NCBI GenBank assembly: GCA_965637545.1
Contig: OZ281496.1
Location: forward strand, 124,001 to 188,000
Direction of reading: 5' to 3'
From: Phallusia mammillata
Taxonomy: Eukaryota
Length of the DNA stretch: 64,000 bases
Part shown: in pieces, positions 2,088-63,822 of the stretch
How positions within the stretch are numbered: the first letter of the stretch is position 1
Layout: every line of letters begins with the position of its first letter
Position numbers and translations under genes: made by a program
Notes under the pieces: model-generated
What the model saw: the letters and a program-made list of their open reading frames with translations, nothing else
What the model was told of the DNA's origin: nothing
The model's database searches: none

Positions 2088-5000
2088 TGCCACCTAGCGG
2101 ACCTTTCATCGACAACATGTTGGATGACGGGGTAACAGTGAATGCAGTGGCGGATCGAAATAACACATTCACATGTCGAGCTTATGGAGGAAAACCTGCA
2201 GCAAAACTTACTTGGTATAAAGGTAAAAGATTTTACGATTGTTTATGTCACAATACACATCTAATGTGTGTGATGTTGCTGCGAGTCATAATGTAACGCA
2301 GGGGTGTCAAACTCGTGGGGTTCGGGGGCCATATTGCAGTTCGGAAATTATGCCGAGGGCCGCATGTGATTTTTAATGTAGTTTTATACACTTAAACAAC
2401 CTTTTCGCTACTACGGCCGCATCGCAGATCCTTATTTCACCAACAGCCACCAATTACCTGCTGGTTTTTATTTTAAAATTACAGATCTAAAGAAATAGGT
2501 TTATATCACATATATATCATCTATTGGCGCCCCAAAAGCCCAGATTACTTTTCAACTTGATGCACAGTGTGAAGATCAGTTTTAATTGTTTGTTACGTCA
2601 TAATCTATATCAGGGCTACTCAATTAGTTTTGTCATAGGCCCAGATACAAAAGATAAAAATCAACGAGGGCCGGACACATCTGTCAGTAATGCAAATGTC
2701 TTAGCCATTTTTGGTTTTAACTAATCGCGGTCCAACTTAAACACATTTGTTCAAGCTGAATGTATGTCGGCAAAACAAAAGCTTGTATCAGGCACTAAAC
2801 GTTAACTTACTCTTTGCGAAAGTATATTGGCACAACATACAAAACACATTTTATCTAGTTTTGTAGGATCACAATGATTCAAAACTAAGTTTATTACGTC
2901 ACAGATAAAATTATGCGTAAGATTTTGGAAAGGCTTTTCGGGATAGCCTAGCTGTCGTAATCCCCCAAAAAATCGCGATGCGGACCCCAGTTTAAAAACT
3001 GCTGCTACATTTTAAAGATTAAGTAATTAACACACAATTGATAGTGTATGTAGCCGTAATCAAAAGACCGTCGAGGTCCACATCCAACGCCTCAAAGGTC
3101 CGGATGTGGACCGCGGTCCGCCATTTGATTACCCCTGATCTATATTGTGACGCTTGTGGTTCCCGTTTTTTCGCATTGTTTGCACACAAAAGGCCAACAA
3201 AATGTCTGACGCATATGTCTACTAGGCTGGTAATACTCTTTCCAGTCCCACAAAATCTGTTTAGAGCAGTTTAAAAATTAAAACTTTTTGGCAAAATAGT
3301 TTTAATTGCGTCACGACCGCCAGTACCTATATTTCTTCACGGCCGCAAAAATATCTGATACAATTGTTGTTGAGTGTTTGTGGGCAGCATTGGAGGGCTT
3401 TGTGGGCCGCATGCGGCCCGCGGGCCGTGAGTTTGACACCCCTGATGTAACGTATTTACTCGATTAAAAGAGTTATGCGCTCCCAGCAAAGTGTACACAT
3501 ATGCATTATTCCGCTTTATAAGTTTTGTGCGCATTTGTTAAACTTTTGACTTTTTGTCACTCGTGCGTAGTAAGTAGGAGATAGAACAAACCAACGCACA
3601 ATATTTGTTATCTCGATGCGCAGAAAGACGTCACAATGACGTCATAATAGACGTCAACCAATCCCTGTGTAAATGGGTTTTACTTGTTTTGCAACAATGA
3701 CAATTTTTCAGATGGAACCGAAATTATCGACAACGTGGAAAACCTTATCTCTGCTCCAGTCAAAAAACTCTATGACACTAGCTCCACCATGCGGATGACA
3801 CCATCAGCTGATGACGTCAATTCCACGTTTGCTTGCATCATGACAAGTGACGTCATGGACGGGATAAAATCGCTTCTGATGAAATTGAATATTCAAAGTG
3901 AGTTAAAAAAATTCAGACAAATAAAATAGAAATCGTAGCCAACAAATATGATGTTTGTGTCGATATCGGAACTGAACTATTTTTCTTGTTTCGAAACCCG
4001 ATATTTTTTTAGGAACTCCGATTGTGTTCGTCTCTCTGCCGCCCTCTATTGATGCGGGTGATGACGTCAGAGCGAAATGTCGAGCTACTGCCAAACTCCC
4101 TGTTGCGTCATACAGGTAAACGTCATCAAATACAGGGAATTCACCGACTTCTTGAAATAGATTCGCATAATTTGACGAAGAAGCACTTTTCTGATGTGTT
4201 GAAGTTGAACAACGAGTTAACACTGCCAACTTTACTCCAGGTGGTTTGTTGATGACCTGGTCCAGTCAGATGAACTTTCACCTACTTTTGACATCGAAAA
4301 CGTAGACAGGAGTTGGCATCACGTGATGTTGGGATGCCAGGCTCGTAATGAGGCGGGATTCTCCAAAGTCAGCCAAGTTCAAATCCAAGTCAAATGTAAG
4401 TAGAATGTGGTGAAATCCCTTAAACTGCACACAACACTTAACTTTGCAGATCCCCCGGTGTTTGTGAGGGGAACTCCCGACCAAACAGCTGAAATCAACG
4501 ACAACGTGACGCTGAGATGTGAGTGGGATTCGAACCCCCAATCTTTGGTTCGTTGGGTGAAAGTTGGCAGTGATGAGATTTACGGAACCGGAAGTTCGTT
4601 GTTTCTCACGGGAATCCAACAGGAAGACGCGGGAAGTTATAATTGCAAAGCAACGGCTGATGGGGTAAGTGTATTATTAACTGTGATATCAGAGCTTTAT
4701 AAACGTCTGAACAATTATAAAGCATGCCGCTTTTTACGTCTTTTTGTGCCTTTAATTTTGTCATTTTCATCATAAGAACAGATCCGTCTGTAGCGTTCCA
4801 AAGAACCTTATATATGGTCAACAATAATTCAAAAGCGCACAATTTTATACATACGTTCTTATCGCTGACGTTTTGCAAACACCACTGTGTCGAAGTGAGC
4901 TTAACAAAATGAAATTTTGTTTTAATTTGAGATTGGTGACAACCATGCCACGATCAAGTTGCACGTTAGGGGACCTCCCGTATTTTCGAGCCCTTCCACT

Positions 5001-11479: not shown

Positions 11480-11679
11480 NNNNNNNNNNNNNNNNNNNNN
11501 NNNNNNNNNNNNNNNNNNNNNNNNNNNNNNNNNNNNNNNNNNNNNNNNNNNNNNNNNNNNNNNNNNNNNNNNNNNNNNNNNNNNNNNNNNNNNNNNNNNN
11601 NNNNNNNNNNNNNNNNNNNNNNNNNNNNNNNNNNNNNNNNNNNNNNNNNNNNNNNNNNNNNNNNNNNNNNNNNNNNNNN
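11480..11679. other. Assembly gap (200 N)
   Basis: A run of exactly 200 N, typical of a scaffolding placeholder; the true length is unknown. Confidence 0.99.
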
Positions 11680-49400: not shown

Positions 49401-52400
49401 TTTTTTAGATAATGCACAATTCCACAACACAAGTAGTTTTGTAATAATTACCTCTAACGTCATCCCATGATAACGTCACTGAGGAGTTTGTGACGTCATC
49501 CACTTTCGGGATTCCAGCGATGTTTGGAACTGAGGTAATAAAAGTGTTTTGGTTTAATTAATAAACAATGGATAACTGTGACATCACAGAGCTAGCTGAC
49601 AGAGCTTTGTTACAAAACAAACAAACAAACTCGTAAGTGAAATTAAAATTGAGTGAAAGTAAAATTACAAATTCATGAAGGCTGGACCAAATATCGTAGA
49701 AAGTGGAAAATTACGTTTGGTAAACTACACTTGACTACAATAAAAATCAAAGAAGAATAAACTGTACAAATATAATTCGCTGTAATCATTGATCAACATG
49801 CACATGCCATGGCATTGTTAAACTTACCTCAAACCCTGTAATAAGCTTTCTGAGCATGCCATGCAAGTTTACATGCATAAAAATTAACCTTGTAAAAATA
49901 AAACAATAATAAGTTTAAAAAAGCTAAAAAACAAACAAAATAAAGAAACGGTAAAAAGAATCAGTTGAAAGGTAACACAGAAATCGTATTTTACCTGTGG
50001 TTTCTTCAACTTGCAAACTCGCTTCGCTCATCCGACTTTCCTCACCAATACTTTTCACAACAAACCAATATCTCGTTCCACTAGATAATGACGTCACTTC
50101 AAGACGTGTCAACGTCGTTTCCATGGTGTTCGTGACGTCATCATCAACGGTTCCGTATTCGAGTCGATATTTAATGGCTCCTGCAACGAAAATTAATTCA
50201 AACAGTTGGACATTACGACTCTTTCTGGATTAAATAGAAAAACAATCAACTTACCAGATACGTCATTCCATTGTACGATAACGGATGATGTAGTTACATC
50301 TGTTATAATGACGTTACCAGGGGCAAGTGGTACTGCAAAAAAAATGATCTGGTGTTAATTAATATGTTTGTGAATGAGTTGAGTTGGTGGTAACAAGTTA
50401 ATCAGTGTCAACTTAACTATCAGGAAATATCAAGTAGTTGTTGATCTCACTGTTGAATTTCTTTGTTTTTTTTCAATTCAATTTTTTTTATTTTTTTTTG
50501 TACCTGTATAAATTCTTTGTTTTGACGTCATAAATGGATTGCTTCGATTTTTTGTTCCGACTGATGTCACAGCTACGTCATATCCTGTTCCTGGTTGCAA
50601 ATTCGAGATTCGAGCGGAAGTACTGTGGACAAGCAGTAGTTGCTCCATGACGTCATCACTGGTGACGTAGACCTTGTACATTTCCGCACCTGATAATTTT
50701 AAAGTCAAGTTAAAAAACAAATTACGTGATGACGTCAATTTTGAAAAACTACCTTTTACGTCATTCCATGTGACGTAGAAAGATGTTGTAGTGACGTCAT
50801 TTATAGTAGGAATATCAGGAAGCGATGGAACTGAAAACAATATTAATGAAAACTCAAATTACTTTTCCGTAGTTAAAAACACTGAACCACGAGAGTTGAT
50901 CGCAACACAAATGAATGGACAAATAGAAATCTTATTTTACCTGTGGTTTCTTCAACTTGCAAACTCGCTTCGCTCATCCGACTTTCCTCGCCAATACTTT
51001 TCACAACAAACCAATATCTCGTTCCACTAGATAATGACGTCACTTCAAGACGTGTCAACGACGTTTCCATGGTGTTTGTGACGTCATCATCAACGTTTCC
51101 ATATTCAAGTCGATATTGGGCAGCCCCTGAAATAATGCCGCAAAAGTTGTAAGTCGGTTCTCGCGGAAATATCCCAGTTCAAACTGCTTTTTCTGCCTCT
51201 TAACGAACATTTAAAGCAGGGGTTCTTAAACTTTTGCGGTCGTACCCCACTTTACACTATTTATTTAATCTCACGTCCTCCCTAAATAAATATTAGCATC
51301 GATAAAATCAATCAGAAGGATACGTCTTTGAATCAGATGCACTGAAAGTAATGGCAATCTCCAATGCAAAATTGCGAACAAATAGAGAATTTACGGGAAA
51401 GAAAAGAAGCCAGGGTTAAGACATCATAACTTACCAATGACGTCACTCCAACGTAATACAACTGATGACGTGGTGACATTTGTTATGATGACGTTGTCAG
51501 GAGCAAGAGGAACTGAAAACAACAATAAACTTGTTTACAATGCTATTAACCAGTGGTAACTTAGTGTTGAGTAATTAACTAACCAGTGGATTATTAACTA
51601 ACCAGTGTTGGATTATTAACTAACCAGTGGATTATTAACTAACCAGTGTTAGATTATAAACTAACCAGTGGGTAATTAACTACCCAGTGGATTATTAACT
51701 AACCAGTGGATTATTAACTAACCAGTGGATAATTAACTAACCAGTGGATAATTAACTAACCAGTGGATTATTAACCAACCAGTGTTGCATTATTAACTAA
51801 CCAGTTCTGCATTATTAACTAAGGATTGAATCATTAACTAACCAGTTTGTATTTGTATTTTTTCACTTCCTCTCTCATTTCTTCTGTCTTTGATTCCAAT
51901 AGAGAAAACAACAAAATCGTACCACGTGCCTGGGTTTAAACCAATCACAACCGCCTGAGCTGGAATTGTTTCCAAAACTTGTCGCGTATCTTCCGTCCCA
52001 TTGGTCCGATAAATCACGTGATATTTTTCCGCGCCTGGAATATTCAAGTTTTAAATCAAACTTAACCAAAACATTTCATTTCTAAGCAAACCTTGGACTG
52101 GTTTCCAACGCAACAGAACTGACGTGGTTGTGACGTCATCAAAGTTTACTCCTGAGGTAGCCGCCGGTCCTGTGACGTCATCAACCAAATTAGTAATGAC
52201 GTAAATATGACGTAACTAATTTCAACTTACGGGTTGTTTCACGTGTTTGAACACTTGCGGCGCTGTGACGCCCAGAAACCCCAACTGACGTCACGGTTAT
52301 GACGTAAGTAGTTCCGGGAATTAGGTTTTTGAGCACTGATGATGTCACATTGGAGGTTTGGTTGTAAATTGTGACGTTGTCGTTTGTCGCAAAATACCGG

Positions 52401-55400
52401 ATGACGTAATCAGTTGCACCTGGTGACGAAACAAAACAATTATTAAAACCATTTAAACAAAAACGAAACGAAATAACTCACCTCGTACATTTGTCCAAAA
52501 CAAATTAAGGGATTTTGTGTTTATTTGTGAGATTTCTATCTTTCGAGGTGGCAGAGGAACTGAACAAAATATTAAATGTTTTAAGTTTCACCGAGAAAAC
52601 TTACTGAACCTACTTCACCTGTTTGAACTTGAACGTGAACTTCAGGGTCAGAATTAACCACACCCAAATCTCCAATAGAAATCACACGGAACTTGTACCA
52701 GCTTCCTGGCCTCAAAGCAGTCGCAGTTGAGGTCGTTGAAGCTGTTTTCGGGGTTTTGAAAGTTTCGTTTGAAGATAAAGTTACTTGGAGTTCGTAAAGG
52801 TTGGCACCTGATGTAAAAGTTTAAAGAAACAAACATGACAGCTACTTAAATTTTAAGTGATTGCAATTTTAACGGGTTGAATAAGTTTAATACTTTGCAA
52901 GATATAAAAGCGTAATACTATTCTTGGTAGCATTTCCTCAAGGGTAAAATTTATTACAAACTGGTTGCCACTTACCTACGACCGGTTGCCAGGCAACGGA
53001 GATACTTGTTGTTGTGACCTTGCCCAATGAAATGACCTTCACAGCCTCTGGTACTGAAAATAAATCAGGTTTACTCCACAATATCGCAACATTACAAGCA
53101 GAAAGACTCACAAGTTGCAATCGACAACTCTTCGCTTTTCCCGCTCTCAACTTTCCCGCCAAAACCAACAGAACTGACGGAAATACCGTGTTCCCTTCCC
53201 GCTTCCAGGAAATTCAACCTGTGTGACGTAACGTTCACTGTTACGTAGGCAGTGACGTCAGTGAGCGCGTTGACGTAAGCGAGTTTGTAGCTGGAAGCCC
53301 CAAAAACTTCGTTCCACGACACCGACATGGAATCGGTGGTTACCATGACAACGGAGACGTCAGAGGGAATTTCGGGAACTGCAAAATATTTTCATGGTTA
53401 GTCAGACTTTATTTGTGACATCACAATGATCTTTGTCACCTGTTTGTTGATGAACAATCGGGCTTCCTCCTAGACTTTCGCGGTTTTTCGAATCCACAGC
53501 AAATACTTTGAAACCATAAACTGAACCGGGATTCAAATTATCGATGGAAACATCGTTTGTGGGTGAATGTTGTTTACTGGTTTCGTTCAAACTCGATATT
53601 TCTACCAAGTATTCAAGCGCTCCTACAAACAACAAGTGTTAGTACGTGATGAATAACGTTGCTGTCATGTTATTCTGCCTTATAGGGTTGTGTAGATATT
53701 GTTCAAGAATTGCCACAGCATACGAATAATATCTTATATTAAAAAAAATGTTTTACAATATATTTTCAAAATCACGAAAAAGTTTTCACCTTTGACCTCT
53801 GCCCATTGGAGTGTGACGGTTGTAGAAGTGACGTCAGTGACAGTTGGCGCGAGCGGATTTTGAGGAACTAAAAATAGAAAAAAACAGAAATATTCGATTC
53901 GTGAGAATTTCCGGACGTTGATTTGGTCAAATGCTCTTTGCAGACCTTGCAAGTTAAGATAACTGATAACATCTACAATTTAGTTGGCAGCAATCTAAAC
54001 TGGCTTTTATGTTGTTATTTCCTCCAATTTTTAAAATGTTGCGTTTTGACAAATCTTATTTTACCTGTGGTTTCTTCAACTTGCAAACTCGCTTCGCTCA
54101 TCCGACTTTCCTCGCCAATACTTTTCACAACAAACCAATATCTCGTTCCACTAGATAATGACGTCACTTCAAGACGTGTCAACGACGTTTCCATGGTGTT
54201 TGTGACGTCATCATCAACGTTTCCATATTCAAGTCGATATTGGGCAGCCCCTGAAATAATGCCGCAAAAGTTGTAAGTCGGTTCTCGCGGAAATATCCCA
54301 GTTCAAACTGCTTTTTCTGCCTCTTAACGAACATTTAAAGCAGGGGTTCTTAAACTTTTGCGGTCGTACCCCACTTTACACTATTTATTTAATCTCACGT
54401 CCTCCCTAAATAAATATTAGCATCGATAAAATCAATCAGAAGGATACGTCTTTGAATCAGATGCACTGAAAGTAATGGCAATCTCCAATGCAAAATTGCG
54501 AACAAATAGAGAATTTACGGGAAAGAAAAGAAGCCAGGGTTAAGACATCATAACTTACCAATGACGTCACTCCAACGTAATACAACTGATGACGTGGTGA
54601 CATTTGTTATGATGACGTTGTCAGGAGCAAGAGGAACTGAAAACAACAATAAACTTGTTTACAATGCTATTAACCAGTGGTAACTTAGTGTTGAGTAATT
54701 AACTAACCAGTGGATTATTAACTAACCAGTGTTGGATTATTAACTAACCAGTGGATTATTAACTAACCAGTGGATTATTAACTAACCAGTGTTAGATTAT
54801 AAACTAACCAGTGGATTATTAACTAACCAGTGGATTATTAACTAACCAGTGGATAATTAACTAACCAGTGGATAATTAACTAACCAGTGGATTATTAACC
54901 AACCAGTGTTGCATTATTAACTAACCAGTGCTGCATTATTAACTAAGGATTGAATCATTAACTAACCAGTTTGTATTTGTATTTTTTCACTTCCTCTCTC
55001 ATTTCTTCTGTCTTTGATTCCAATAGAGAAAACAACAAAATCGTACCACGTGCCTGGGTTTAAACCAATCACAACCGCCTGAGCTGGAATTGTTTCCAAA
55101 ACTTGTCGCGTATCTTCCGTCCCATTGGTCCGATAAATCACGTGATATTTTTCCGCGCCTGGAATATTCAAGTTTTAAATCAAACTTAACCAAAACATTT
55201 CATTTCTAAGCAAACCTTGGACTGGTTTCCAACGCAACAGAACTGACGTGGTTGTGACGTCATCAAAGTTTACTCCTGAGGTAGCCGCCGGTCCTGTGAC
55301 GTTATCAACCAAATTAGTAATGACGTAAATATGACGTAACTAATTTCAACTTACGGGTTGTTTCACGTGTTTGAACACTTGCGGCGCTGTGACGCCCAGA

Positions 55401-58400
55401 AACCCCAACTGACGTCACGGTTATGACGTAAGTAGTTCCGGGAATTAGGTTTTTGAGCACTGATGATGTCACATTGGAGGTTTGGTTGTAAATTGTGACG
55501 TTGTCGTTTGTCGCAAAATACCGGATGACGTAATCAGTTGCACCTGGTGACGAAACAAAACAATTATTAAAACCATTTAAACAAAAACGAAACGAAATAA
55601 CTCACCTCGTACATTTGTCCAAAACAAATTAAGGGATTTTGTGTTTATTTGTGAGATTTCTATCTTTCGAGGTGGCAGAGGAACTGAACAAAATATTAAA
55701 TGTTTTAAGTTTCACCGAGAAAACTTACTGAACCTACTTCACCTGTTTGAACTTGAACGTGAACTTCAGGGTCAGAATTAACCACACCCAAATCTCCAAC
55801 AGAAATCACACGGAACTTGTACCAGCTTCCTGGCCTCAAAGCAGTCGCAGTTGAGGTCGTTGAAGCTGTTTTCGGGGTTTTGAAAGTTTCGTTTGAAGAT
55901 AAAGTTACTTGGAGTTCGTAAAGGTTGGCACCTGATGTAAAAGTTTAAAGAAACAAACATGACAGCTACTTAAATTTTAAGTGATTGCAATTTTAACGGG
56001 TTGAATAAGTTTAATACTTTGCAAGATATAAAAGCGTAATACTATTCTTGGTAGCATTTCCTCAAGGGTAAAATTTATTACAAACTGGTTGCCACTTACC
56101 TACGACCGGTTGCCAGGCAACGGAGATACTTGTTGTTGTGACCTTGCCCAATGAAATGACCTTCACAGCCTCTGGTACTGAAAATAAATCAGGTTTACTC
56201 CACAATATCGCAACATTACAAGCAGAAAGACTCACAAGTTGCAATCGACAACTCTTCGCTTTTCCCGCTCTCAACTTTCCCGCCAAAACCAACAGAACTG
56301 ACGGAAATACCGTGTTCCCTTCCCGCTTCCAGGAAATTCAACCTGTGTGACGTAACGTTCACTGTTACGTAGGCAGTGACGTCAGTGAGCGCGTTGACGT
56401 AAGCGAGTTTGTAGCTGGAAGCCCCAAAAACTTCGTTCCACGACACCGACATGGAATCGGTGGTTACCATGACAACGGAGACGTCAGAGGGAATTTCGGG
56501 AACTGCAAAATATTTTCATGGTTGGTCAGACTTTATTTGTGACATCACAATGATCTTTGTCACCTGTTTGTTGATGAACAATCGGGCTTCCTCCTAGACT
56601 TTCGCGGTTTTTCGAATCCACAGCAAATACTTTGAAACCATAAACTGAACCGGGATTCAAATTATCGATGGAAACATCGTTTGTGGGTGAATGTTGTTTA
56701 CTGGTTTCGTTCAAACTCGATATTTCTACCAAGTATTCAAGCGCTCCTACAAACAACAAGTGTTAGTACGTGATGAATAACGTTGCTGTCATGTTATTCT
56801 GCCTTATAGGGTTGTGTAGATATTGTTCAAGAATTGCCACAGCATACGAATAATATCTTATATTAAAAAAAAATGTTTTACAATATATTTTCAAAATCAC
56901 GAAAAAGTTTTCACCTTTGACCTCTGCCCATTGGAGTGTGACGGTTGTAGAAGTGACGTCAGTGACAGTTGGCGCGAGCGGATTTTGAGGAACTAAAAAT
57001 AGAAAAAAACAGAAATATTCGATTCGTGAGAATTTCCGGACGTTGATTTGGTCAAATGCTCTTTGCAGACCTTGCAAGTTAAGATAACTGATAACATCTA
57101 CAATTTAGTTGGCAGCAATCTAAACTGGCTTTTATGTTGTTATTTCCTCCAATTTTTAAAATGTTGCGTTTTGACAAATCTTATTTTACCTGTGGTTTCT
57201 TCAACTTGCAAACTCGCTTCGCTCATCCGACTTTCCTCGCCAATACTTTTCACAACAAACCAATATCTCGTTCCACTAGATAATGACGTCACTTCAAGAC
57301 GCGTCAACGACGTTTCCATGGTGTTTGTGACGTCATCGTCAACGTTTCCATATTCAAGTCGATATTGGGCAGCCCCTGAAATAATGCCGCAAAAGTTGTA
57401 AGTCGGTTCTCGCGGAAATATCCCAGTTCAAACTGCTTTTTCTGCCTCTTAACGAACATTTAAAGCAGGGGTTCTTAAACTTTTGCGGTCGTACCCCACT
57501 TTACACTATTTATTTAATCTCACGTCCTCCCTAAATAAATATTAGCATCGATAAAATCAATCAGAAGGATACGTCTTTGAATCAGATGCACTGAAAGTAA
57601 TGGCAATCTCCAATGCAAAATTGCGAACAAATAGAGAATTTACGGGAAAGAAAAGAAGCCAGGGTTAAGACATCATAACTTACCAATGACGTCACTCCAA
57701 CGTAATACAACTGATGACGTGGTGACATTTGTTATGATGACGTTGTCAGGAGCAAGAGGAACTGAAAACAACAATAAACTTGTTTACAATGCTATTAACC
57801 AGTGGTAACTTAGTGTTGAGTAATTTACTAACCAGTGGATTATTAACTAACCAGTGTTGGATTATTAACTAACCAGTGGATTATTAACTAACCAGTGGAT
57901 TATTAACTAACCAGTGTTAGATTATAAACTAACCAGTGGATTATTAACTAACCAGTGGATTATTAACTAACCAGTGGATAATTAACTAACCAGTGGATAA
58001 TTAACTAACCAGTGGATTATTAACCAACCAGTGTTGCATTATTAACTAACCAGTGCTGCATTATTAACTAAGGATTGAATCATTAACTAACCAGTTTGTA
58101 TTTGTATTTTTTCACTTCCTCTCTCATTTCTTCTGTCTTTGATTCCAATAGAGAAAACAACAAAATCGTACCACGTGCCTGGGTTTAAACCAATCACAAC
58201 CGCCTGAGCTGGAATTGTTTCCAAAACTTGTCGCGTATCTTCCGTCCCATTGGTCCGATAAATCACGTGATATTTTTCCGCGCCTGGAATATTCAAGTTT
58301 TAAATCAAACTTAACCAAAACATTTCATTTCTAAGCAAACCTTGGACTGGTTTCCAACGCAACAGAACTGACGTGGTTGTGACGTCATCAAAGTTTACTC

Positions 58401-61400
58401 CTGAGGTAGCCGCCGGTCCTGTGACGTTATCAACCAAATTAGTAATGACGTAAATATGACGTAACTAATTTCAACTTACGGGTTGTTTCACGTGTTTGAA
58501 CACTTGCGGCGCTGTGACGCCCAGAAACCCCAACTGACGTCACGGTTATGACGTAAGTAGTTCCGGGAATTAGGTTTTTGAGCACTGATGATGTCACATT
58601 GGAGGTTTGGTTGTAAATTGTGACGTTGTCGTTTGTCGCAAAATACCGGATGACGTAATCAGTTGCACCTGGTGACGAAACAAAACAATTATTAAAACCA
58701 TTTAAACAAAAACGAAACGAAATAACTCACCTCGTACATTTGTCCAAAACAAATTAAGGGATTTTGTGTTTATTTGTGAGATTTCTATCTTTCGAGGTGG
58801 CAGAGGAACTGAACAAAATATTAAATGTTTTAAGTTTCACCGAGAAAACTTACTGAACCTACTTCACCTGTTTGAACTTGAACGTGAACTTCAGGGTCAG
58901 AATTAACCACACCCAAATCTCCAACAGAAATCACACGGAACTTGTACCAGCTTCCTGGCCTCAAAGCAGTCGCAGTTGAGGTCGTTGAAGCTGTTTTCGG
59001 GGTTTTGAAAGTTTCGTTTGAAGATAAAGTTACTTGGAGTTCGTAAAGGTTGGCACCTGATGTAAAAGTTTAAAGAAACAAACATGACAGCTACTTAAAT
59101 TTTAAGTGATTGCAATTTTAACGGGTTGAATAAGTTTAATACTTTGCAAGATATAAAAGCGTAATACTATTCTTGGTAGCATTTCCTCAAGGGTAAAATT
59201 TATTACAAACTGGTTGCCACTTACCTACGACCGGTTGCCAGGCAACGGAGATACTTGTTGTTGTGACCTTGCCCAATGAAATGACCTTCACAGCCTCTGG
59301 TACTGAAAATAAATCAGGTTTACTCCACAATATCGCAACATTACAAGCAGAAAGACTCACAAGTTGCAATCGACAACTCTTCGCTTTTCCCGCTCTCAAC
59401 TTTCCCGCCAAAACCAACAGAACTGACGGAAATACCGTGTTCCCTTCCCGCTTCCAGGAAATTCAACCTGTGTGACGTAACGTTCACTGTTACGTAGGCA
59501 GTGACGTCAGTGAGCGCGTTGACGTAAGCGAGTTTGTAGCTGGAAGCCCCAAAAACTTCGTTCCACGACACCGACATGGAATCGGTGGTTACCATGACAA
59601 CGGAGACGTCAGAGGGAATTTCGGGAACTGCAAAATATTTTCATGGTTGGTCAGACTTTATTTGTGACATCACAATGATCTTTGTCACCTGTTTGTTGAT
59701 GAACAATCGGGCTTCCTCCTAGACTTTCGCGGTTTTTCGAATCCACAGCAAATACTTTGAAACCATAAACTGAACCGGGATTCAAATTATCGATGGAAAC
59801 ATCGTTTGTGGGTGAATGTTGTTTACTGGTTTCGTTCAAACTGGATATTTCTACCAAGTATTCAAGCGCTCCTACAAACAACAAGTGTTATAACGTGATG
59901 AATAACTTTGTTGTCATGTTATTCTGATTTTGTTTCAAAGGTTGTTTATTTTTATTTGTTCAAGAATTATCAAAGTAAGAGAATAGTTTCTAATACTAAA
60001 AAACTGTTTCTACAATTTATTTTCAAAATATGGAGAGAAAAGTAATTTCACCTTTGACCTCTGCCCATTGGAGTGTGACGGTTGTAGAAGTGACGTCAGT
60101 GACAGTTGGCGCGAGCGGATTTTGAGGAACTAAAAAAATAAAAAAATAAAATATTCGATTCACCATAATTTCGAGACTTACTTGTTGATTCGGAGAAAAC
60201 TTCGCTTCGTTCGCTGCGTTGACCGCCTTCACCAACCGTTGTGATAGTGACGTCATATAGCGTTCCAGAACTGAGGTTTGCGATCACAACTCGCGTGTCT
60301 GACGTCACTATGGTATCCGGCAGGAATATGTCATCATCTTGTGACGTTACAATCACTTCGTACGTAGAAGCTCCTGCGATTGGTGACGTAATTAAGTTTT
60401 AACTTGGGGTGGTGTGATTTCTATGTTACCTTTTACGTTTTCCCAATCCAAAGCAAAACTTGAATCGCTGGTTTCCGACACAGAAATATTTCGCACAGAT
60501 TCAACCACTGAAAAAGAAAGCAGAGAATTTAATATTTATTCGATAAATTGCGTTAACGAACTTGAATTCCCGATTTTTTAATAAGCAACCTGTTTGTGTC
60601 AGGGAATATGTTTAATACATAAGACTTCTCACTGCCAGCAACCAAAAACGGGTAGAGCTACTAACACAGGATCTCATAATAGAAAAGGGTCAGGCGCGCC
60701 GGAGCTCCAGCGTTTTTTACAAAAACTGCATTTGAAATATTTCCGTTGTGCCACCTACCGGAATTTAGCAAACCTGTTTGGTGTGAGTTCTTGTGTTAGC
60801 AGCTCTACCCTAAAAATGTGGGTGGAGCTACTAACACCATACCTCTCGCGACACCCAAAAGTCCCTAATTTTCGACAAGTGGCGCAAAGAGCAGTTTTTT
60901 ACATTTGAAACGTTATATCTCCTAAAATGCTGACGGTTAGGGCTATTGGGGTCGGGGTAAGGTATTAGCATTTAAAAATTCACTAAAACTAACCCCAAAA
61001 TTTAGTTTCTAATGTAAAAATTGTATAAACTTATTTCCCAACCCAACCCCTCTTCAGCCGCTAAATAAATAATCCAGCTCTTTACGCTCCCTTGTGAAAG
61101 TGAAACTCCCGTGAAGCATGGTGTTAATAGCTCTACCAAAAATCTCCTAAACTCTGAACTCACCAGTTTGAAACGTCACAACTCCGCTCGTCCCCGGACT
61201 CGTCCGGTTCCGCACCCCCACTGACGTCATAGTGACGTCATACCACGTTCCAGCTGTGAGTCCCGTGATCTCGCTTGAAGGGCGTTCGGCGGTCAAAGTC
61301 ATAATGTCACCTTCTTCACTTTCAACAAATACTTCGTAATAAACAGCTCCTGTGACGACAACGTCGGTTAGTGACGTCAGATAAACTTCGAGTTGCAAAA

Positions 61401-63822
61401 TTTTGGCAAACCTTTCTGTTTATTCCATTTGATGCTTGCAGCATTTAGTTCAACAGAAGTCACAGTAGCATTGCTTGGGACATCAGGCCCTAAGAACAAA
61501 TAATTGGATTTCAAAACTAGTTTAAGCGAATAGTTCCAACTTACCTTTTGCACTTGCCAGAAAACAAACGCAAAAATGACCCAAAAGTTTTATTCACACA
61601 AGTTTAGTAAAACCAGTAAAAGAAAATACAGAAGTTGGTAAAAATTCAATTCGAATTTTGTACTTACTTCATGAGAGCAACAGTAAAAATACGACTTCCG
61701 TATATTTAATCTTCATTCCGACCTTTTCTTCTTTGCAGGTGGAAGTAGTGTTACGTCACAATGCAGACTTTTGTTACGTCACCACGTTACGTCACCGGAG
61801 CAAACTTTTATTCTCAGCAAATCATGCAAACAATTGTTGTGTTGTGACGTCATAAGTGTCGTGAAACGATGTGAATTTTTTGGATGGAAAGGAAATGTGA
61901 AAACACAACTTATGAATAAGGACATTGGGCTAATTATTGAAGAAATCTACAGATTTCATGCAGGGGTTTCAGTCACGCCTCATGCAAGCATCAGTGATAA
62001 TTACATTTTGTCCCAATTGATTGAAGGTTATTTTGAGATTTTGGGGTCGCTATAGTGTTGTTGTTATACAGTTTTATGCGACAATAGTTGGTTCGTCCAG
62101 TTTCAAGCAACATTGTCAGGGGTGATATTTTCAGTGATATTAACTTACACAAAATATGAACTTATATTTCGTGTGAACTTTAGAAAATAATGAAACAATT
62201 GTGAAAATTAAACAGCAAATTTGTGTTAAAAGTTTGGTGCAAAACAGCAAAGTTTTGTCAGTTAGTGAACACCCCCCCTTCTTGCTCCCCCGTGCACACA
62301 GCAGCGCCACCAAGTGTTTCTAGCTTTGCAACAACTCACTGGTCGTCTCGCGAACCACGTGACTTTCCGCGCTTGACTGGTTTTCCTCTCCGACCGCCGT
62401 CACATAGAAATCGTATGCAGTGCCAGCACTCAACGATTCGATGGAAATAAATGTTTCACTCGTTGTGAGAATTACTTCGTTTTCGTCAGGATCGACGCTG
62501 CGGACCCGGATATTGTAGGACTGTGCCCCTGTGGATGGATATACCGGTTTGCAGACAGGAGTTTGGGTGGAAATGATGAATTTTTTTGCAAACTTAATTC
62601 AGGCCAACTAATGATGTAGCCAACTGTGGTAATAGTTCAGATATAAATCACATTTTGATGAACTATTGATTAAAACTTTTTTCAATTGCTATTGTAAGAA
62701 GTAATAAATTATGTTTAGTATAACAAACCTATGACAGATTTCCACCAGAGGCCGATCGACGAAACGTTGACTTCGGTAACAACAACATCAGTTGGCGTTG
62801 ATGGGACTAAACAAAATAATAGTTAAACAAACGCCAACACAAGCACATAGCCTCACAGCCACAAAAAAACACATAGCCAGAAAAACGCACAGACACGCGG
62901 CCACACAACCGCACAAACACAGAAACGCACAGACACACAGACACACGGCCACACAACCGCACAAACACAGAAACGCACAGAGACACAGCCACACAAACAC
63001 ACGATCGCACAAACATACAGCCGCACAAACACAGAATCGCACAAACGCACAGCTACACAAAGAAGTTAAACGCACAGCAACACAGCTACACGAACACACA
63101 CACAGCCCCGTCAAACGTACAAACGAATAAACATACACAACACACAAACCTTCCAACCTGTTTGTTTTCTCGCTGTATCGCTTCCATTCCGGTTTATGCG
63201 GTCTTTCACGCCAACTGAATAAATCACAAACTCGTGCCATGTGCCAGCTGGCAGGTTCTCAACTGTGACACCTGTGACTGCCCCGCTGCCACTTTCCACA
63301 CTCATGTTGACAATCCCCTCATTGTTTTCGATTGTCACCACATAGTTCTCGGCTCCTTTTTGCGCGTTCCATTCTAATTCGACTGTGTTGGTTGTTACGT
63401 CACTGACAGTTACAGAACTTGGTCTGGAAGGAACTAGAACACAAAAACAATAATCAAATGTTTCGTTTACAAAGTAGATTATGACGTCACTTACGAGTTG
63501 TTTCGCTTATTGCTTGTGACGTCACACCAGTAAGATTTACGAGGCCAACAGCGGTCACGGTAAACCTGTAGTTACTTCCAGACATAAGACTTGTCAAAGT
63601 CATAAACGTTTTTTCTGTTGTAGAACTTGTGACGTCATCATTTTCATTATAAACATTAATGACGTAATAAACGGCACCTGTAAGCATAGTTTGCATTAAA
63701 CATCGGGATATCAAACAAACACAATCATAGGTGAGATTACAAACCGTTGACGTCATCCCATGACAAAGTTAATGACGTAGTAGTGACATCACTACTCTGA
63801 AAGTTTCGAGGAGACGCTGGAG
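34469..63822 (-). CDS. Giant FN3-repeat protein, probably secreted extracellular matrix; 5'-partial, 83 exons, about 4,070 aa and 43 FN3 domains in window, no TM segment
   Basis: Exons 5' to 3': 63822-63745, 63677-63495, 63433-63158, 62806-62729, 62528-62340, 61489-61412, 61349-61164, 60507-60430, 60373-60182. Then an 11-exon unit three times; copy 3 is 60129-60052, 59871-59689, 59627-59361, 59302-59225, 59056-58868, 58808-58731, 58668-58480, 58418-58341, 58283-58092, 57761-57684, 57375-57190, and copies 2 and 1 span 56992-54065 and 53867-50941. Then 50830-50753, 50689-50504, 50332-50255, 50180-49995, 49529-49452, 49374-49183, 49118-49041, 48979-48797, 48740-48663, 48528-48337, 48281-48204, 47421-47239, 47178-46909, 46679-46602, 46535-46350, 46220-46143, 45990-45802, 45744-45667, 45611-45432, 45171-45094, 44656-44468, 44398-44321, 43638-43432, 42182-42023, 41955-41825, 41507-41360, 41300-41176, 40721-40562, 40179-40049, 39956-39930, 39286-39139, 39006-38885, 38822-38659, 38580-38472, 38032-37921, 37392-37253, 37146-36753, 36697-36376, 36305-36119, 34834-34642, 34580-34469 (TGA). 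All are GT-AG and frame-consistent (12212 nt). FN3 signature P..P..V..VT.TS..V.W..V.GA..Y.V...L.PGT.Y.F.V.SVG. Confidence 0.9.
34919..35275 (+). mobile_element. Degenerate L1/Tx1 non-LTR retrotransposon ORF2 fragment (linker between endonuclease and RT)
   Basis: Translations in shifting frames with stops give ELERNIEALDDKIS, WAERGEKTQNILEKRHVKK and INRLKSGDQVNTDQKSILSELSRFFEDLYK. These match the L1/Tx1 W...GEK.TKYF..LEK / DQ..IL....FY..LY motifs. Confidence 0.7.
35435..35980 (+). repeat. hAT remnant (3' end GGTTAAGAATCCCTG at 35658) followed by two diverged direct repeats of about 110 bp (35659-35768 and 35872-35980)
   Basis: CCTTATTG.CTCTAAAACGTAAAC...AAAATTAAACGG.TTTCACGA...TTGGAATTGCAG...AAGTTTCAGTTTGTTCA is present twice. 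Confidence 0.65.
37517..37810 (+). mobile_element. Diverged MITE, same family as 15909-16258
   Basis: Ends CAGGGTTGCCGT / ATGGCAACTTTG, with shared internal blocks (GTAGAAAATACTT, TAGCAGGGATTTGACTT, AAGGACGGTATGGCA). Confidence 0.72.
38231..38432. mobile_element. MITE of the GGTAGAGCTACTAACAC-TIR family
   Basis: Right end GTGAGTTTCTGTGTTAGTAGCTCTACC, degenerate left end GCTACTTGCACAGGAGCTCACACC. Confidence 0.65.
40380..40450 (-). ncRNA. tRNA-like cloverleaf (tRNA-derived SINE head or tRNA pseudogene)
   Basis: Minus strand CCTGTGAGACTTAGTTGGTAGAGCTCGAGTCCCGGAAAGACTCCTGTCGTGGGTCCGAATCCCACCGCAGG. It has an A-box, a B-box variant, anticodon stem GAGTC/GACTC with loop CCGGAAA, T stem GTGGG/CCCAC, acceptor CCTGTG/CGCAGG and a downstream TTTTT. 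Confidence 0.55.
41031..41116 (-). mobile_element. MITE end with (CCCGAA/GGCCCG)n subterminal repeats
   Basis: Minus strand CAGAGTTGCAAACGCGCCCGAAA followed by CCCGGCCCGAACCCGAA repeats; truncated. Confidence 0.55.
42257..42686. mobile_element. Fold-back (long inverted repeat) element
   Basis: AGAGACGGAGAC / GTCTCCATCTCT ends; GAAGTCATCCACTGTT pairs with AACGGTGGATGACTTC; TAATAGGCATCATCAGTATC...GGACAAGTTAAACT pairs with AGTTTAACTTGTTC...GATACTAATGATGCCTATTA. Confidence 0.7.
42723..43373. mobile_element. Non-autonomous hAT element (CAGGGTTGCCAGG family)
   Basis: Perfect 14-bp TIR CAGGGTTGCCAGGT / ACCTGGCAACCCTG, TSD GTTCTCAC / GTTCTCAG (7/8), and GGACA/TGTCC subterminal repeats. Confidence 0.88.
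44022..44256. mobile_element. hAT MITE
   Basis: TIRs CAGTGGTCGGCAACC / GGTTGCCGACCCCTG, TSD ACTTCAGT / ACTTAAGT (7/8), and ACCGGTCCGC subterminal motifs. Confidence 0.88.
44854..45065. mobile_element. hAT MITE with degenerate left end
   Basis: Right end GAGCCGCATGCGGCCCC...GTTTGAGAACCACTG, left end CAGTGGAAACT, TSD ATTTAAAA / TTTTAAAA. Confidence 0.72.
47479..48183. mobile_element. GGTAGAGCTACTAACAC-TIR MITE interrupted by an L1/Tx1 insertion
   Basis: Left end GGTAAAGGTATTAACACACGAACTCACAC and right end GTGTGAGTTCCTGTGTTAGTAGCTCTACC. Confidence 0.78.
47691..48077 (-). mobile_element. 5'-truncated L1/Tx1 retrotransposon copy (ORF2 C-terminus plus A-rich tail)
   Basis: ORF 47774-48079 (YWENVCAWI...LLFG...LVNCMLLCARYVIYQCK...KKWCRLL) matches L1/Tx1 ORF2 C-termini. 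An (AAAAT)n/polyA tail lies at about 47691-47735. Perfect 17-bp TSD AACTGTCCGCATTTTTT at 47674-47690 and 48078-48094. Confidence 0.85.
51576..51843. repeat. Intronic minisatellite, 19-21-bp unit ACTAACCAGTGGATTATTA, about 12 units (copy 1)
   Basis: Direct tandem repeats ending at the exon boundary 51843. Confidence 0.95.
54700..54967. repeat. Same minisatellite (copy 2)
   Basis: About 12 units; the order of variant units differs from copy 1. Confidence 0.95.
57825..58092. repeat. Same minisatellite (copy 3)
   Basis: About 12 units; nearly identical to copy 2. Confidence 0.95.
60650..60810. mobile_element. MITE of the GGTAGAGCTACTAACAC-TIR family
   Basis: GGGTAGAGCTACTAACACAGGATCTCA / TGAGTTCTTGTGTTAGCAGCTCTACCC. 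Confidence 0.82.
60821..61137. mobile_element. Second MITE with the same TIR but a different interior, 10 bp from the first
   Basis: GGTGGAGCTACTAACACCAT / ATGGTGTTAATAGCTCTACC. Confidence 0.8.
62830..63150. repeat. AC-rich low-complexity minisatellite
   Basis: CACACAACCGCACAAACACAGAAACGCACAGACAC units, in the intron between exons 63158 and 62806. Confidence 0.9.

What the first reader, a model, noticed from the sequence alone, without database searches (positions are those of the whole stretch)
50927..60135. Three near-identical 3.12-kb six-domain cassettes inside the gene
An 11-exon, phase-1-bounded unit is repeated three times with introns almost identical, adding 532 aa per copy. The copies are distinguishable: ATT versus GTT (I/V) at 52677 versus 55801, a 1-nt A-run indel near 56870, and a different minisatellite unit order. 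This implies ongoing unequal crossing-over and possibly copy-number (protein-length) polymorphism among individuals.
Basis: seen in the sequence. Interest (0 to 1): 0.72.

Follow-up and report, generated by a model that had tools for sequence, protein, structure and literature searches.

The report
Tripled six-domain cassette in sea-squirt gene
A giant secreted matrix-protein gene of the sea squirt Phallusia mammillata carries three almost identical 3.1-kb, 11-exon blocks in a row, each adding six fibronectin-type domains; this is a real but ordinary way for repeat proteins to grow, and whether the copy number varies between animals could not be tested here.

Summary
Window 50927-60161 (minus-strand gene) holds three tandem copies, period 3124/3125 nt, of an 11-exon unit. 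All exons are phase 1 with AG/GT sites, and each copy codes 1596 nt = 532 aa = six FN3 domains. Copies differ by 3-4 SNVs each (99.85-99.9%), a minisatellite re-ordering and one 1-nt indel.

Corrections:
- The third copy is near-identical only up to 59890.
- Its first intron is 72-88% identical, yet its first exon is 100% identical.

The gene is Phallusia mammillata CAB3265300.1, misnamed "PTP eta-like". It has a signal peptide, a VWA domain and at least 67 FN3 domains, with no transmembrane segment and no phosphatase domain.

Unequal crossing-over or gene conversion is supported only indirectly, by:
- the mosaic middle copy;
- the diverged array edge and junction;
- conversion-like identical patches in older paralogous exons.

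The only public cDNA-derived protein joins exon 62528-62340 directly to exon 49529-49452. That skips 41 exons, including the whole array.

This is a known kind (nebulin and titin triplicate regions, LPA KIV-2). The scan has already noted similar young multi-exon tandem cassettes in other genes of this genome.

The parts
57176..60161 (-). Cassette copy c3, first in the gene. Exons: A1 60129-60052, A2 59871-59689, B 59627-59361, C1 59302-59225, C2 59056-58868, D1 58808-58731, D2 58668-58480, E1 58418-58341, E2 58283-58092, F1 57761-57684, F2 57375-57190.
   Evidence: It is near-identical to c2 for 57176-59890, with 4 SNVs. The head 59891-60161 is diverged except for exon A1. It carries 3 private synonymous changes, at 59843, 57338 and 57302.
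54051..57175 (-). Cassette copy c2, the middle copy. Exons: A1 56992-56915, A2 56746-56564, B 56502-56236, C1 56177-56100, C2 55931-55743, D1 55683-55606, D2 55543-55355, E1 55293-55216, E2 55158-54967, F1 54636-54559, F2 54250-54065.
   Evidence: It has no private SNV, only a 1-nt A-run indel at 56865. It matches c1 at 54177, 54213, 54701 and 56718, and matches c3 at 54772-54930, 55303, 55800 and 56524.
50927..54050 (-). Cassette copy c1, last in the gene. Exons: A1 53867-53790, A2 53622-53440, B 53378-53112, C1 53053-52976, C2 52807-52619, D1 52559-52482, D2 52419-52231, E1 52169-52092, E2 52034-51843, F1 51512-51435, F2 51126-50941.
   Evidence: All exons have AG/GT sites and are phase 1, giving 1596 nt = 532 aa. 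Pfam fn3 hits were obtained exon by exon. Codon ATT (Ile) at 52676-52674 is GTT (Val) in c2 and c3.
53868..54064 (-). Junction intron F2(c2)->A1(c1), 197 nt. An identical second copy lies at 56993-57189. It consists of 14 nt of F2 flank, 150 nt of junction-specific sequence (53901-54050) and 33 nt of A1 flank.
   Evidence: One search shows the two junctions are 100% identical. The 150-nt piece is not derived from exon P2 or from any other exon flank. Of it, 76 nt (53918-53993) are 89% identical to an intron on C5.
51574..51846 (-). Minisatellite with a 19-22-nt unit that begins at the E2 donor site, inside the E2-F1 intron. It is also present at 54698-54977 and 57823-58102.
   Evidence: TRF. 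The unit order differs in c1 relative to c2 and c3.
51208..51394 (.). Short interspersed repeat inside the F1-F2 intron. It is present in all three copies (+3124 and +6249) and in more than 40 other places in the genome.
   Evidence: unit positions 282-468 match at 84-93% on contigs C1-C8. It is absent from the older paralogue's intron.
60182..60373 (-). Exon P2, the second half of the FN3 domain just upstream of the array. It is followed by a 52-nt intron before A1 of c3.
50753..50830 (-). Exon G1, the first exon after the array. The F2(c1)->G1 intron is 110 nt. Near-identity among the copies stops 14 nt into that intron, at 50927.
49995..50180 (-). Exon H2, an older F2-type exon 95-97% identical to the cassette F2 exons while its introns are unrelated. 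A fifth copy lies outside the window at G000:C3:191519-191704.
62340..62528 (-). Exon whose donor is joined directly to exon 49529-49452 in the public protein CAB3265300.1.
   Evidence: The last exon base A plus TT gives Ile, exactly as in the protein.
49452..49529 (-). Acceptor exon of that join. The 41 exons between the two (O, P, 3 cassettes, G, H; 5850 coding nt = 1950 aa) are absent from the public protein.

Best explanation
This is a genuine intragenic tandem triplication. A 3.12-kb genomic block of 11 phase-1 exons, encoding six FN3 domains, stands three times head to tail. It lies inside the gene for a giant secreted VWA + FN3-array protein of Phallusia mammillata.

Every exon in this part of the gene is phase 1-1. 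Any whole-exon or whole-cassette gain or loss therefore keeps the reading frame. Each copy adds 532 aa, so the array contributes 18 of the at least 67 FN3 domains.

The array was most likely founded by a non-homologous duplication that left 150 nt of foreign filler in the junction intron. It has since been expanded and kept about 99.9% uniform by unequal crossing-over and gene conversion between the copies. The outer edge, which is the head of c3, escaped that homogenisation.

Shown here: the anatomy, the copy differences, the gene identity, and the intact frames and splice sites. Inferred: the recombination history. Untested: copy number in other animals and inclusion of the cassettes in mRNA.
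For: Repeat and period.

Base-by-base copy comparison.

Exon model:
- 33 exons have AG/GT sites, are phase 1, and total 1596 nt per copy.
- fn3 hits were found exon by exon.

Copy differences:
- Only 4 coding differences exist, 3 of them synonymous.
- Two of c3's private changes are derived relative to the two older F2-type exons.
- c2 has no private SNV and is a c1/c3 mosaic.

Junctions and edge:
- The two junction introns are 100% identical, so at least one later step was homologous.
- The 150-nt junction piece is unrelated to either flank. 76 nt of it are 89% identical to a C5 intron.
- The c3 head intron is 72-88% identical against 99.9% for the interior.

Older paralogues show sharply bounded identical patches:
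- about 120 nt at the 3' end of E2;
- a 58-nt identical run within the 95-97% identical F2-type exons, whose flanks are unrelated.

Gene identity: about 60 exons are 100% identical to CAB3265300.1 of P. mammillata.

Protein architecture: signal peptide, VWA, no transmembrane segment, no phosphatase domain.

Assembly context: there is no assembly gap within 39 kb and no second copy of the locus elsewhere in the assembly.
Against: - No reads were available, so the number three rests on the assembly alone.
- A mosaic middle copy without private SNVs is also what an assembler error between two real copies could produce. Its one private difference is a homopolymer length.
- The only independent sequence, CAB3265300.1, lacks the array.
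- No public protein contains cassette domains A-D.
- The 100% identity of exon A1 in c3, between 72-91% flanks, needs an extra assumption: a short conversion tract or strong selection.
Confidence: 0.78

Rival explanations
1. Assembly artefact in copy number. The junction is real, so at least two copies exist, but the middle copy was created or mis-threaded by the assembler. Alternatively, the true number in this haplotype is not three.
For: c2 carries no private SNV and is a patchwork of c1 and c3 states. Its only private feature is a 1-nt homopolymer difference at 56865. No reads could be laid.
Against: - c1 and c3 each carry distinct private variants.
- c1 has its own minisatellite arrangement.
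- Both junction introns are complete and identical.
- There is no N gap nearby.
- A 9.2-kb array is short relative to modern long reads. This point is inference, because the sequencing technology of this assembly was not checked.
- An unequal crossover between two copies predicts the same mosaic.
Confidence: 0.12
2. Two simple, very recent duplication steps with no long-term homogenisation. On this view the diverged head of c3 and the filler divergence have other causes, for example a divergent allele captured at the edge, or a filler that belongs to a small repeat family.
For: Interior divergence is only about 0.1-0.15%. Ascidians are highly polymorphic, as stated in PMC7237864, so locally divergent intron haplotypes are conceivable.
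Against: - 72-88% identity is confined to one intron, next to a 100% identical exon.
- The 76-nt junction segment is only 89% identical to its one other copy in the genome.
- Conversion-like patches in the older E/F paralogues show that non-allelic exchange does act in this gene.
Confidence: 0.2
3. The cassettes, and the whole O-to-H block 62339-49530, are normally not part of the mature mRNA. They would be skipped wholesale or be absent in many haplotypes, so the triplication would not change the main protein.
For: CAB3265300.1 joins the donor after 62340 to the acceptor at 49529 with the exact junction codon expected from splicing. No public protein holds domains A-D. Clavelina orthologue isoforms differ by whole FN3 blocks of 179 and 354 aa.
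Against: - Domains A-D are old: they are 30-40% identical to every other domain in the gene. Yet they keep open frames, FN3 consensus and canonical splice sites.
- 3 of the 4 coding differences are synonymous.
- CAB3265300.1 itself contains a cassette-type F1 exon at 100% and a cassette-type start of F2. Cassette-type sequence therefore probably was in the RNA.
- That transcriptome covered only eggs to larvae (PMC7237864).
Confidence: 0.2

Closest known systems
Nebulin triplicate (TRI) region of human NEB
   Same: It is a multi-exon block repeated three times in tandem inside a giant modular structural-protein gene. The copies are highly identical and frame-preserving, and the region is described as prone to copy-number variation (PMC9109913).
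   Different: NEB has eight exons per unit, encoding nebulin repeats of an intracellular muscle protein. Here there are 11 exons and six FN3 domains of a secreted protein in an ascidian. CNV has been demonstrated in NEB and not here.
Titin (TTN) intragenic segmental-duplication region
   Same: It is an intragenic block of domain-encoding exons present in near-identical tandem copies, with recurrent copy-number change reported (PMC9142044).
   Different: It is a sarcomeric protein and its CNV has been measured by array CGH and ddPCR. No such data exist for this locus.
LPA kringle IV-2 repeat (from general knowledge, not checked in a paper here)
   Same: It is a tandem multi-exon unit with near-identical introns whose copy number sets protein length.
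   Different: It has a two-exon, 5.5-kb unit with dozens of copies and well-documented human polymorphism.
Alternatively spliced FN3 block of tenascin-C (from general knowledge)
   Same: A run of FN3 domains, including the youngest and most similar ones, lies between constant FN3 domains and can be skipped as a block. All exons are phase-compatible.
   Different: This gene is not a tenascin. It has no EGF or fibrinogen domains (Pfam list), and the Phallusia tenascin is a different protein, CAB3267154 (PMC11401434). Skipping here rests on one cDNA-derived model.
Other young multi-exon tandem cassettes noted by this scan in the same genome (s1-403083, s1-405503, s1-392419, s1-399161)
   Same: They are in the same genome and are the same kind of event: head-to-tail copies of exon blocks with near-identical introns.
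   Different: They are in different genes with different domain types. Some of them were reported by their follow-up agents as polymorphic, which I did not check.

Membership tests
Fibronectin type III domain (Pfam PF00041) | A profile match over the ~85-residue domain. | tested here: met
   Exon-by-exon scans:
- Cassette exon B, a whole domain, scores 24.5 bits against a cut-off of 25 (E 3e-5).
- D2 scores 25.3.
- The other half-domain exons score 18.8-22.5.
- Neighbouring single-exon domains score 32-38 bits.

PF00041 is in the precomputed list for the gene's protein P0002. My own half-domain HMMs found 48 N-halves and 67 C-halves in register along the gene.
Receptor-type protein tyrosine phosphatase (R3: PTPRH/eta, PTPRB), the database name of the gene product | A transmembrane segment followed by a PTP catalytic domain (PF00102). 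| tested here: not met
   There is no PF00102 in the Pfam list of P0002 or in the C-terminal exons. P0002 has no hydrophobic 19-mer with KD >= 2.0. The name comes from FN3 similarity only.
Tenascin | EGF-like repeats plus a C-terminal fibrinogen-related domain. | tested here: not met
   Neither family is in the Pfam list of P0002. The P. mammillata tenascin is reported as CAB3267154 (PMC11401434).
FACIT-type collagens XII/XIV (VWA + FN3) | A collagen triple-helix region. | tested here: not met
   VWA is present. No collagen repeat family appears in the Pfam list of P0002.
Intragenic multi-exon tandem duplication ('triplicate region' kind) | At least two head-to-tail copies of a multi-exon block with near-identical introns. 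| tested here: met
   The interior is 99.85-99.9% identical, introns included.
Intragenic multi-exon tandem duplication ('triplicate region' kind) | The copies preserve the reading frame and splice signals. | tested here: met
   All 33 exons have AG/GT sites and are phase 1, giving 1596 nt per copy.
Intragenic multi-exon tandem duplication ('triplicate region' kind) | Copy number varies between individuals. | not testable with these tools
Intragenic multi-exon tandem duplication ('triplicate region' kind) | The copies are included in the mRNA. | tested here: inconclusive
   CAB3265300.1 skips the block but carries a cassette-type F1 exon and a cassette-type start of F2. No public protein holds domains A-D.

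The most novel reading that the evidence does not exclude
The triplicated cassettes lie inside a 12.8-kb, 41-exon, 22-FN3 'variable region' (62339-49530) that is spliced out as a block in embryonic or larval mRNA and included elsewhere. This would resemble the alternatively spliced FN3 block of tenascin-C. Relaxed constraint on that region would let cassette number drift by unequal crossing-over, so protein length would vary both by splicing and between animals.
Probability: 0.3. Interest if true: 0.5.

Novelty: new member of a known kind. Interest (0 to 1): 0.3.

Why it matters
The locus is a clean example of how giant modular matrix proteins lengthen. All exons share one phase, so whole cassettes can be gained, lost or skipped without breaking the frame.

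If copy number proves variable, the locus would offer an invertebrate-chordate counterpart to the nebulin and titin triplicate regions. It would also be a marker of non-allelic recombination in a highly polymorphic species.

It has practical value for annotation:
- The public protein for this gene is misnamed as a tyrosine phosphatase.
- That protein lacks 1950 residues encoded in the genome.
- It contains a chimeric domain.

Tried and rejected
- **The search for homologous proteins** with exon B (99 aa) found nothing, because the length window excludes the giant proteins.
- **Typed peptide letters.** I rebuilt the step from coordinates.
- **Spliced models.** Searches were done exon by exon by reference or with database protein ids. 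The joined cassette was translated only inside local scripts, to check length and frame.
- **Origin of the 150-nt junction piece.** I tested whether it is a decayed copy of exon P2 or of another exon flank. It is not: score 15 against a shuffle mean of 16.1.
- **NAHR deletion.** I tested whether the introns after 62340 and before 49529 share homology that could drive an NAHR deletion. They do not.
- **Placing the skipped block on the Clavelina orthologue.** Two equally good diagonals appeared, so the result is uninformative.
- **Orthologue repeats.** I looked for near-identical internal repeats in the orthologues and found none.
- **Literature.** No paper in the library names the gene's accessions.
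- **Tenascin, collagen XII/XIV and receptor phosphatase.** These identities were considered and rejected (see the membership tests).
Full report
**1. Observation**

The repeat finder, an offset-identity scan and self-BLAST all show a head-to-tail repeat of period 3124 nt (copy 1 to copy 2) and 3125 nt (copy 2 to copy 3), starting at 50927. A three-way alignment gives the copies:
- c1: 50927-54050
- c2: 54051-57175
- c3: 57176-~60161

The only N run in the window is at 11480-11679, far from the array. The rest of the assembly holds no second copy of the unit.

**2. Anatomy of the unit**

The gene is on the minus strand. I chose splice sites by frame continuity and consensus. This gives 11 exons per copy: A1, A2, B, C1, C2, D1, D2, E1, E2, F1 and F2.
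- Their lengths are 78/183/267/78/189/78/189/78/192/78/186 nt.
- Every exon is flanked by AG and GT, and every exon is phase 1.
- The total is 1596 nt = 532 aa.
- The same sites are intact in c2 and c3.
- Five domains are split into a 78-nt first-half exon and a ~186-nt second-half exon. Domain B is a single exon.
- Pfam scans, run exon by exon by reference, give fn3 as the top hit for all six exons scanned.

The joined translation was made only in a local script, to check length and frame.

**3. Differences between the copies**

c1 versus c2:
- Outside the minisatellite there are 3 SNVs, at 52179, 52676 and 53400.
- There is a 1-nt A-run indel at 56865.
- Inside the minisatellite there is a shifted unit order at 51649-51683 and one SNV at 51806.

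c2 versus c3, up to 59890:
- There are 4 SNVs, at c1-equivalent positions 51053, 51089, 51577 and 53594.

Only four differences are coding. One is Ile (c1) versus Val (c2 and c3) in exon C2. The other three are synonymous changes private to c3.

The two older F2-type exons serve as outgroups. They show that c3's two F2 changes are derived.

c2 has no private SNV. It equals c1 at its head, c3 in its middle, and c1 at the three sites where c3 differs near its tail. This is what one unequal crossover between a c3-like and a c1-like copy would give, followed by a few mutations in c3. A mis-threaded assembly of two copies would look the same, so this pattern cannot decide on its own.

**4. Edges and junction**

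At the low-coordinate end, near-identity stops 14 nt into the intron after F2 (50927). The two older F2-type exons share those same 14-16 nt.

The cassette-to-cassette intron is 197 nt and 100% identical at both junctions. It consists of:
- those 14 nt of F2 flank;
- 150 nt found nowhere in either flank;
- 33 nt shared with the 52-nt intron in front of A1 of c3.

The 150-nt piece is not a decayed copy of exon P2 or of any other exon flank. Of it, 76 nt are 89% identical to an intron on contig C5.

At the high-coordinate end, c3 compares with c1 as follows:
- 91% identical in the 33 nt before A1;
- 100% in exon A1;
- 72% in the first 107 nt of the A1-A2 intron;
- 88% in the last 60 nt of that intron;
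- about 99.9% from there on.

So the founding event looks non-homologous, with filler DNA, and not very recent. The uniform interior looks secondarily homogenised.

**5. The gene**

A single-exon query (exon B, 88 aa) against the 1.84-billion representative library returned P0002 among its best hits. P0002 is CAB3265300.1 / A0A6F9DQI9, [quoted passage not shown], 5021 aa.
- About 60 exons, from extended coordinate ~85.8 kb (locus L003) down to window 34472, match it at 100%, in order. This fixes both the species and the gene.
- It has a signal-peptide-like N-terminus, a VWA domain and then FN3 domains.
- It has no hydrophobic segment, and no phosphatase, EGF, fibrinogen or collagen family in its Pfam list.
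- My half-domain HMMs count 67 second-half exons along the gene.

The database name is therefore a misnomer. This is a giant secreted VWA + FN3-array protein.

The orthologues are Clavelina lepadiformis LOC143466065 (isoforms of 5603-6305 aa) and Ciona intestinalis LOC100178140 (3607 aa). None of them has near-identical internal repeats.

**6. What the public protein says about the array**

P0002 passes from exon 62528-62340 directly to exon 49529-49452.
- The junction codon is Ile. This is what the last base A of the first exon plus TT of the second gives.
- The genomic neighbour exon H2 would give Val.
- Skipped are domains O and P, the three cassettes, and domains G and H. That is 41 exons, 5850 nt and 1950 aa. 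The full-inclusion protein would be about 6970 aa.

P0002 probably comes from the embryo-to-larva de novo transcriptome of Sladitschek et al. That work used Velvet/Oases with 31-mers and built consensus in peptide space (PMC7237864). This link is my inference.

A de Bruijn artefact cannot easily create that exact exon-exon join. A real skip isoform, or a deletion allele, is therefore likely. The two introns share no homology that would favour an NAHR deletion.

P0002's F' domain is a chimera. It has a cassette-type F1 exon at 100%, a cassette-type start of F2, and then the upstream paralogue's F2. The paralogues share 58- to 62-nt identical runs, so a k=31 path switch explains the chimera. It also implies that cassette-type F exons were present in the RNA.

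Clavelina isoforms differ by whole FN3 blocks of 179 and 354 aa. Block skipping is thus plausible for this gene family.

**7. Older exchanges in the same gene**

Five F2-type exons are 95-97% identical while their introns are unrelated. They are the three cassette copies, H2 at 50180-49995, and one at extended 67704-67519.

E2 and its upstream paralogue are 87% identical overall. Their last ~120 nt are identical, and the identity runs on into the intron.

These sharply bounded patches are the usual signature of short gene-conversion tracts. They support the view that non-allelic exchange is active in this gene.

**8. Verdict**

The mechanism, unequal crossing-over with homogenisation, is the best reading but remains inferred. 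Copy-number polymorphism is untested.

**9. What could not be done**

**10. Comparison with known cases**

This is a new member of a well-known kind:
- the NEB triplicate region (PMC9109913) and the TTN segmental-duplication region (PMC9142044), both;
- LPA KIV-2, from general knowledge.

The scan has already recorded comparable cassettes in other genes of this genome. The one feature worth following up is that the array lies in a block the only cDNA-derived model skips.

Noticed in passing
window 62340 -> 49529 (minus strand): The only public protein of this gene (CAB3265300.1) joins these two exons directly and omits 41 exons (1950 aa). The junction codon fits true splicing.
   Followed up: partly
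window 49995-50180, 50941-51126 (+3124, +6249) and L001:3519-3704: Five F2-type exons are 95-97% identical, with a core that is nearly invariant, while their introns are unrelated. E2 and its upstream paralogue (L001 about 4056-4245) share an identical ~120-nt 3' end. These look like gene-conversion patches.
   Followed up: partly
P0002 residues 2196-2282: The public protein's F' domain is a chimera of the cassette-type F1 and start of F2 with the upstream paralogue's F2 end. It is probably a k-mer path switch in the transcript assembly, or else a converted allele.
   Followed up: partly
window 51574-51846, 54698-54977, 57823-58102: A minisatellite begins exactly at the E2 donor site. On the coding strand its 19-22-nt unit contains a GGTTAGT donor-like motif, giving about 14 tandem donor look-alikes. 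Another first-stage note, s1-382316, covers this.
   Followed up: no
window 51208-51394 (and +3124, +6249): A short interspersed repeat of about 190 nt lies in the F1-F2 intron. More than 40 copies at 84-93% occur on contigs C1-C8. It is absent from the older paralogue's intron.
   Followed up: no
window 53918-53993 and L004:2055-2130: 76 nt of the junction-specific intron piece are 89% identical to an intron of a coiled-coil-like gene on contig C5. This may be templated filler or a rare small repeat.
   Followed up: partly
whole gene, L003:1736-1837 down to window 34472: The database name 'receptor-type tyrosine-protein phosphatase eta-like' is a misnomer. The protein has a signal peptide, VWA and at least 67 FN3 domains, with no transmembrane segment and no phosphatase domain.
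   Followed up: yes
P0168, P0169, P0167 (Clavelina lepadiformis orthologue): The annotated isoforms differ by whole FN3 blocks: 179 aa deleted at 3262, and 354 and 179 aa inserted at 3619 and 3822.
   Followed up: partly
window 62888-63098: A CA-rich compound tandem repeat with 8/16/32/48-nt periods lies inside an intron of the gene.
   Followed up: no
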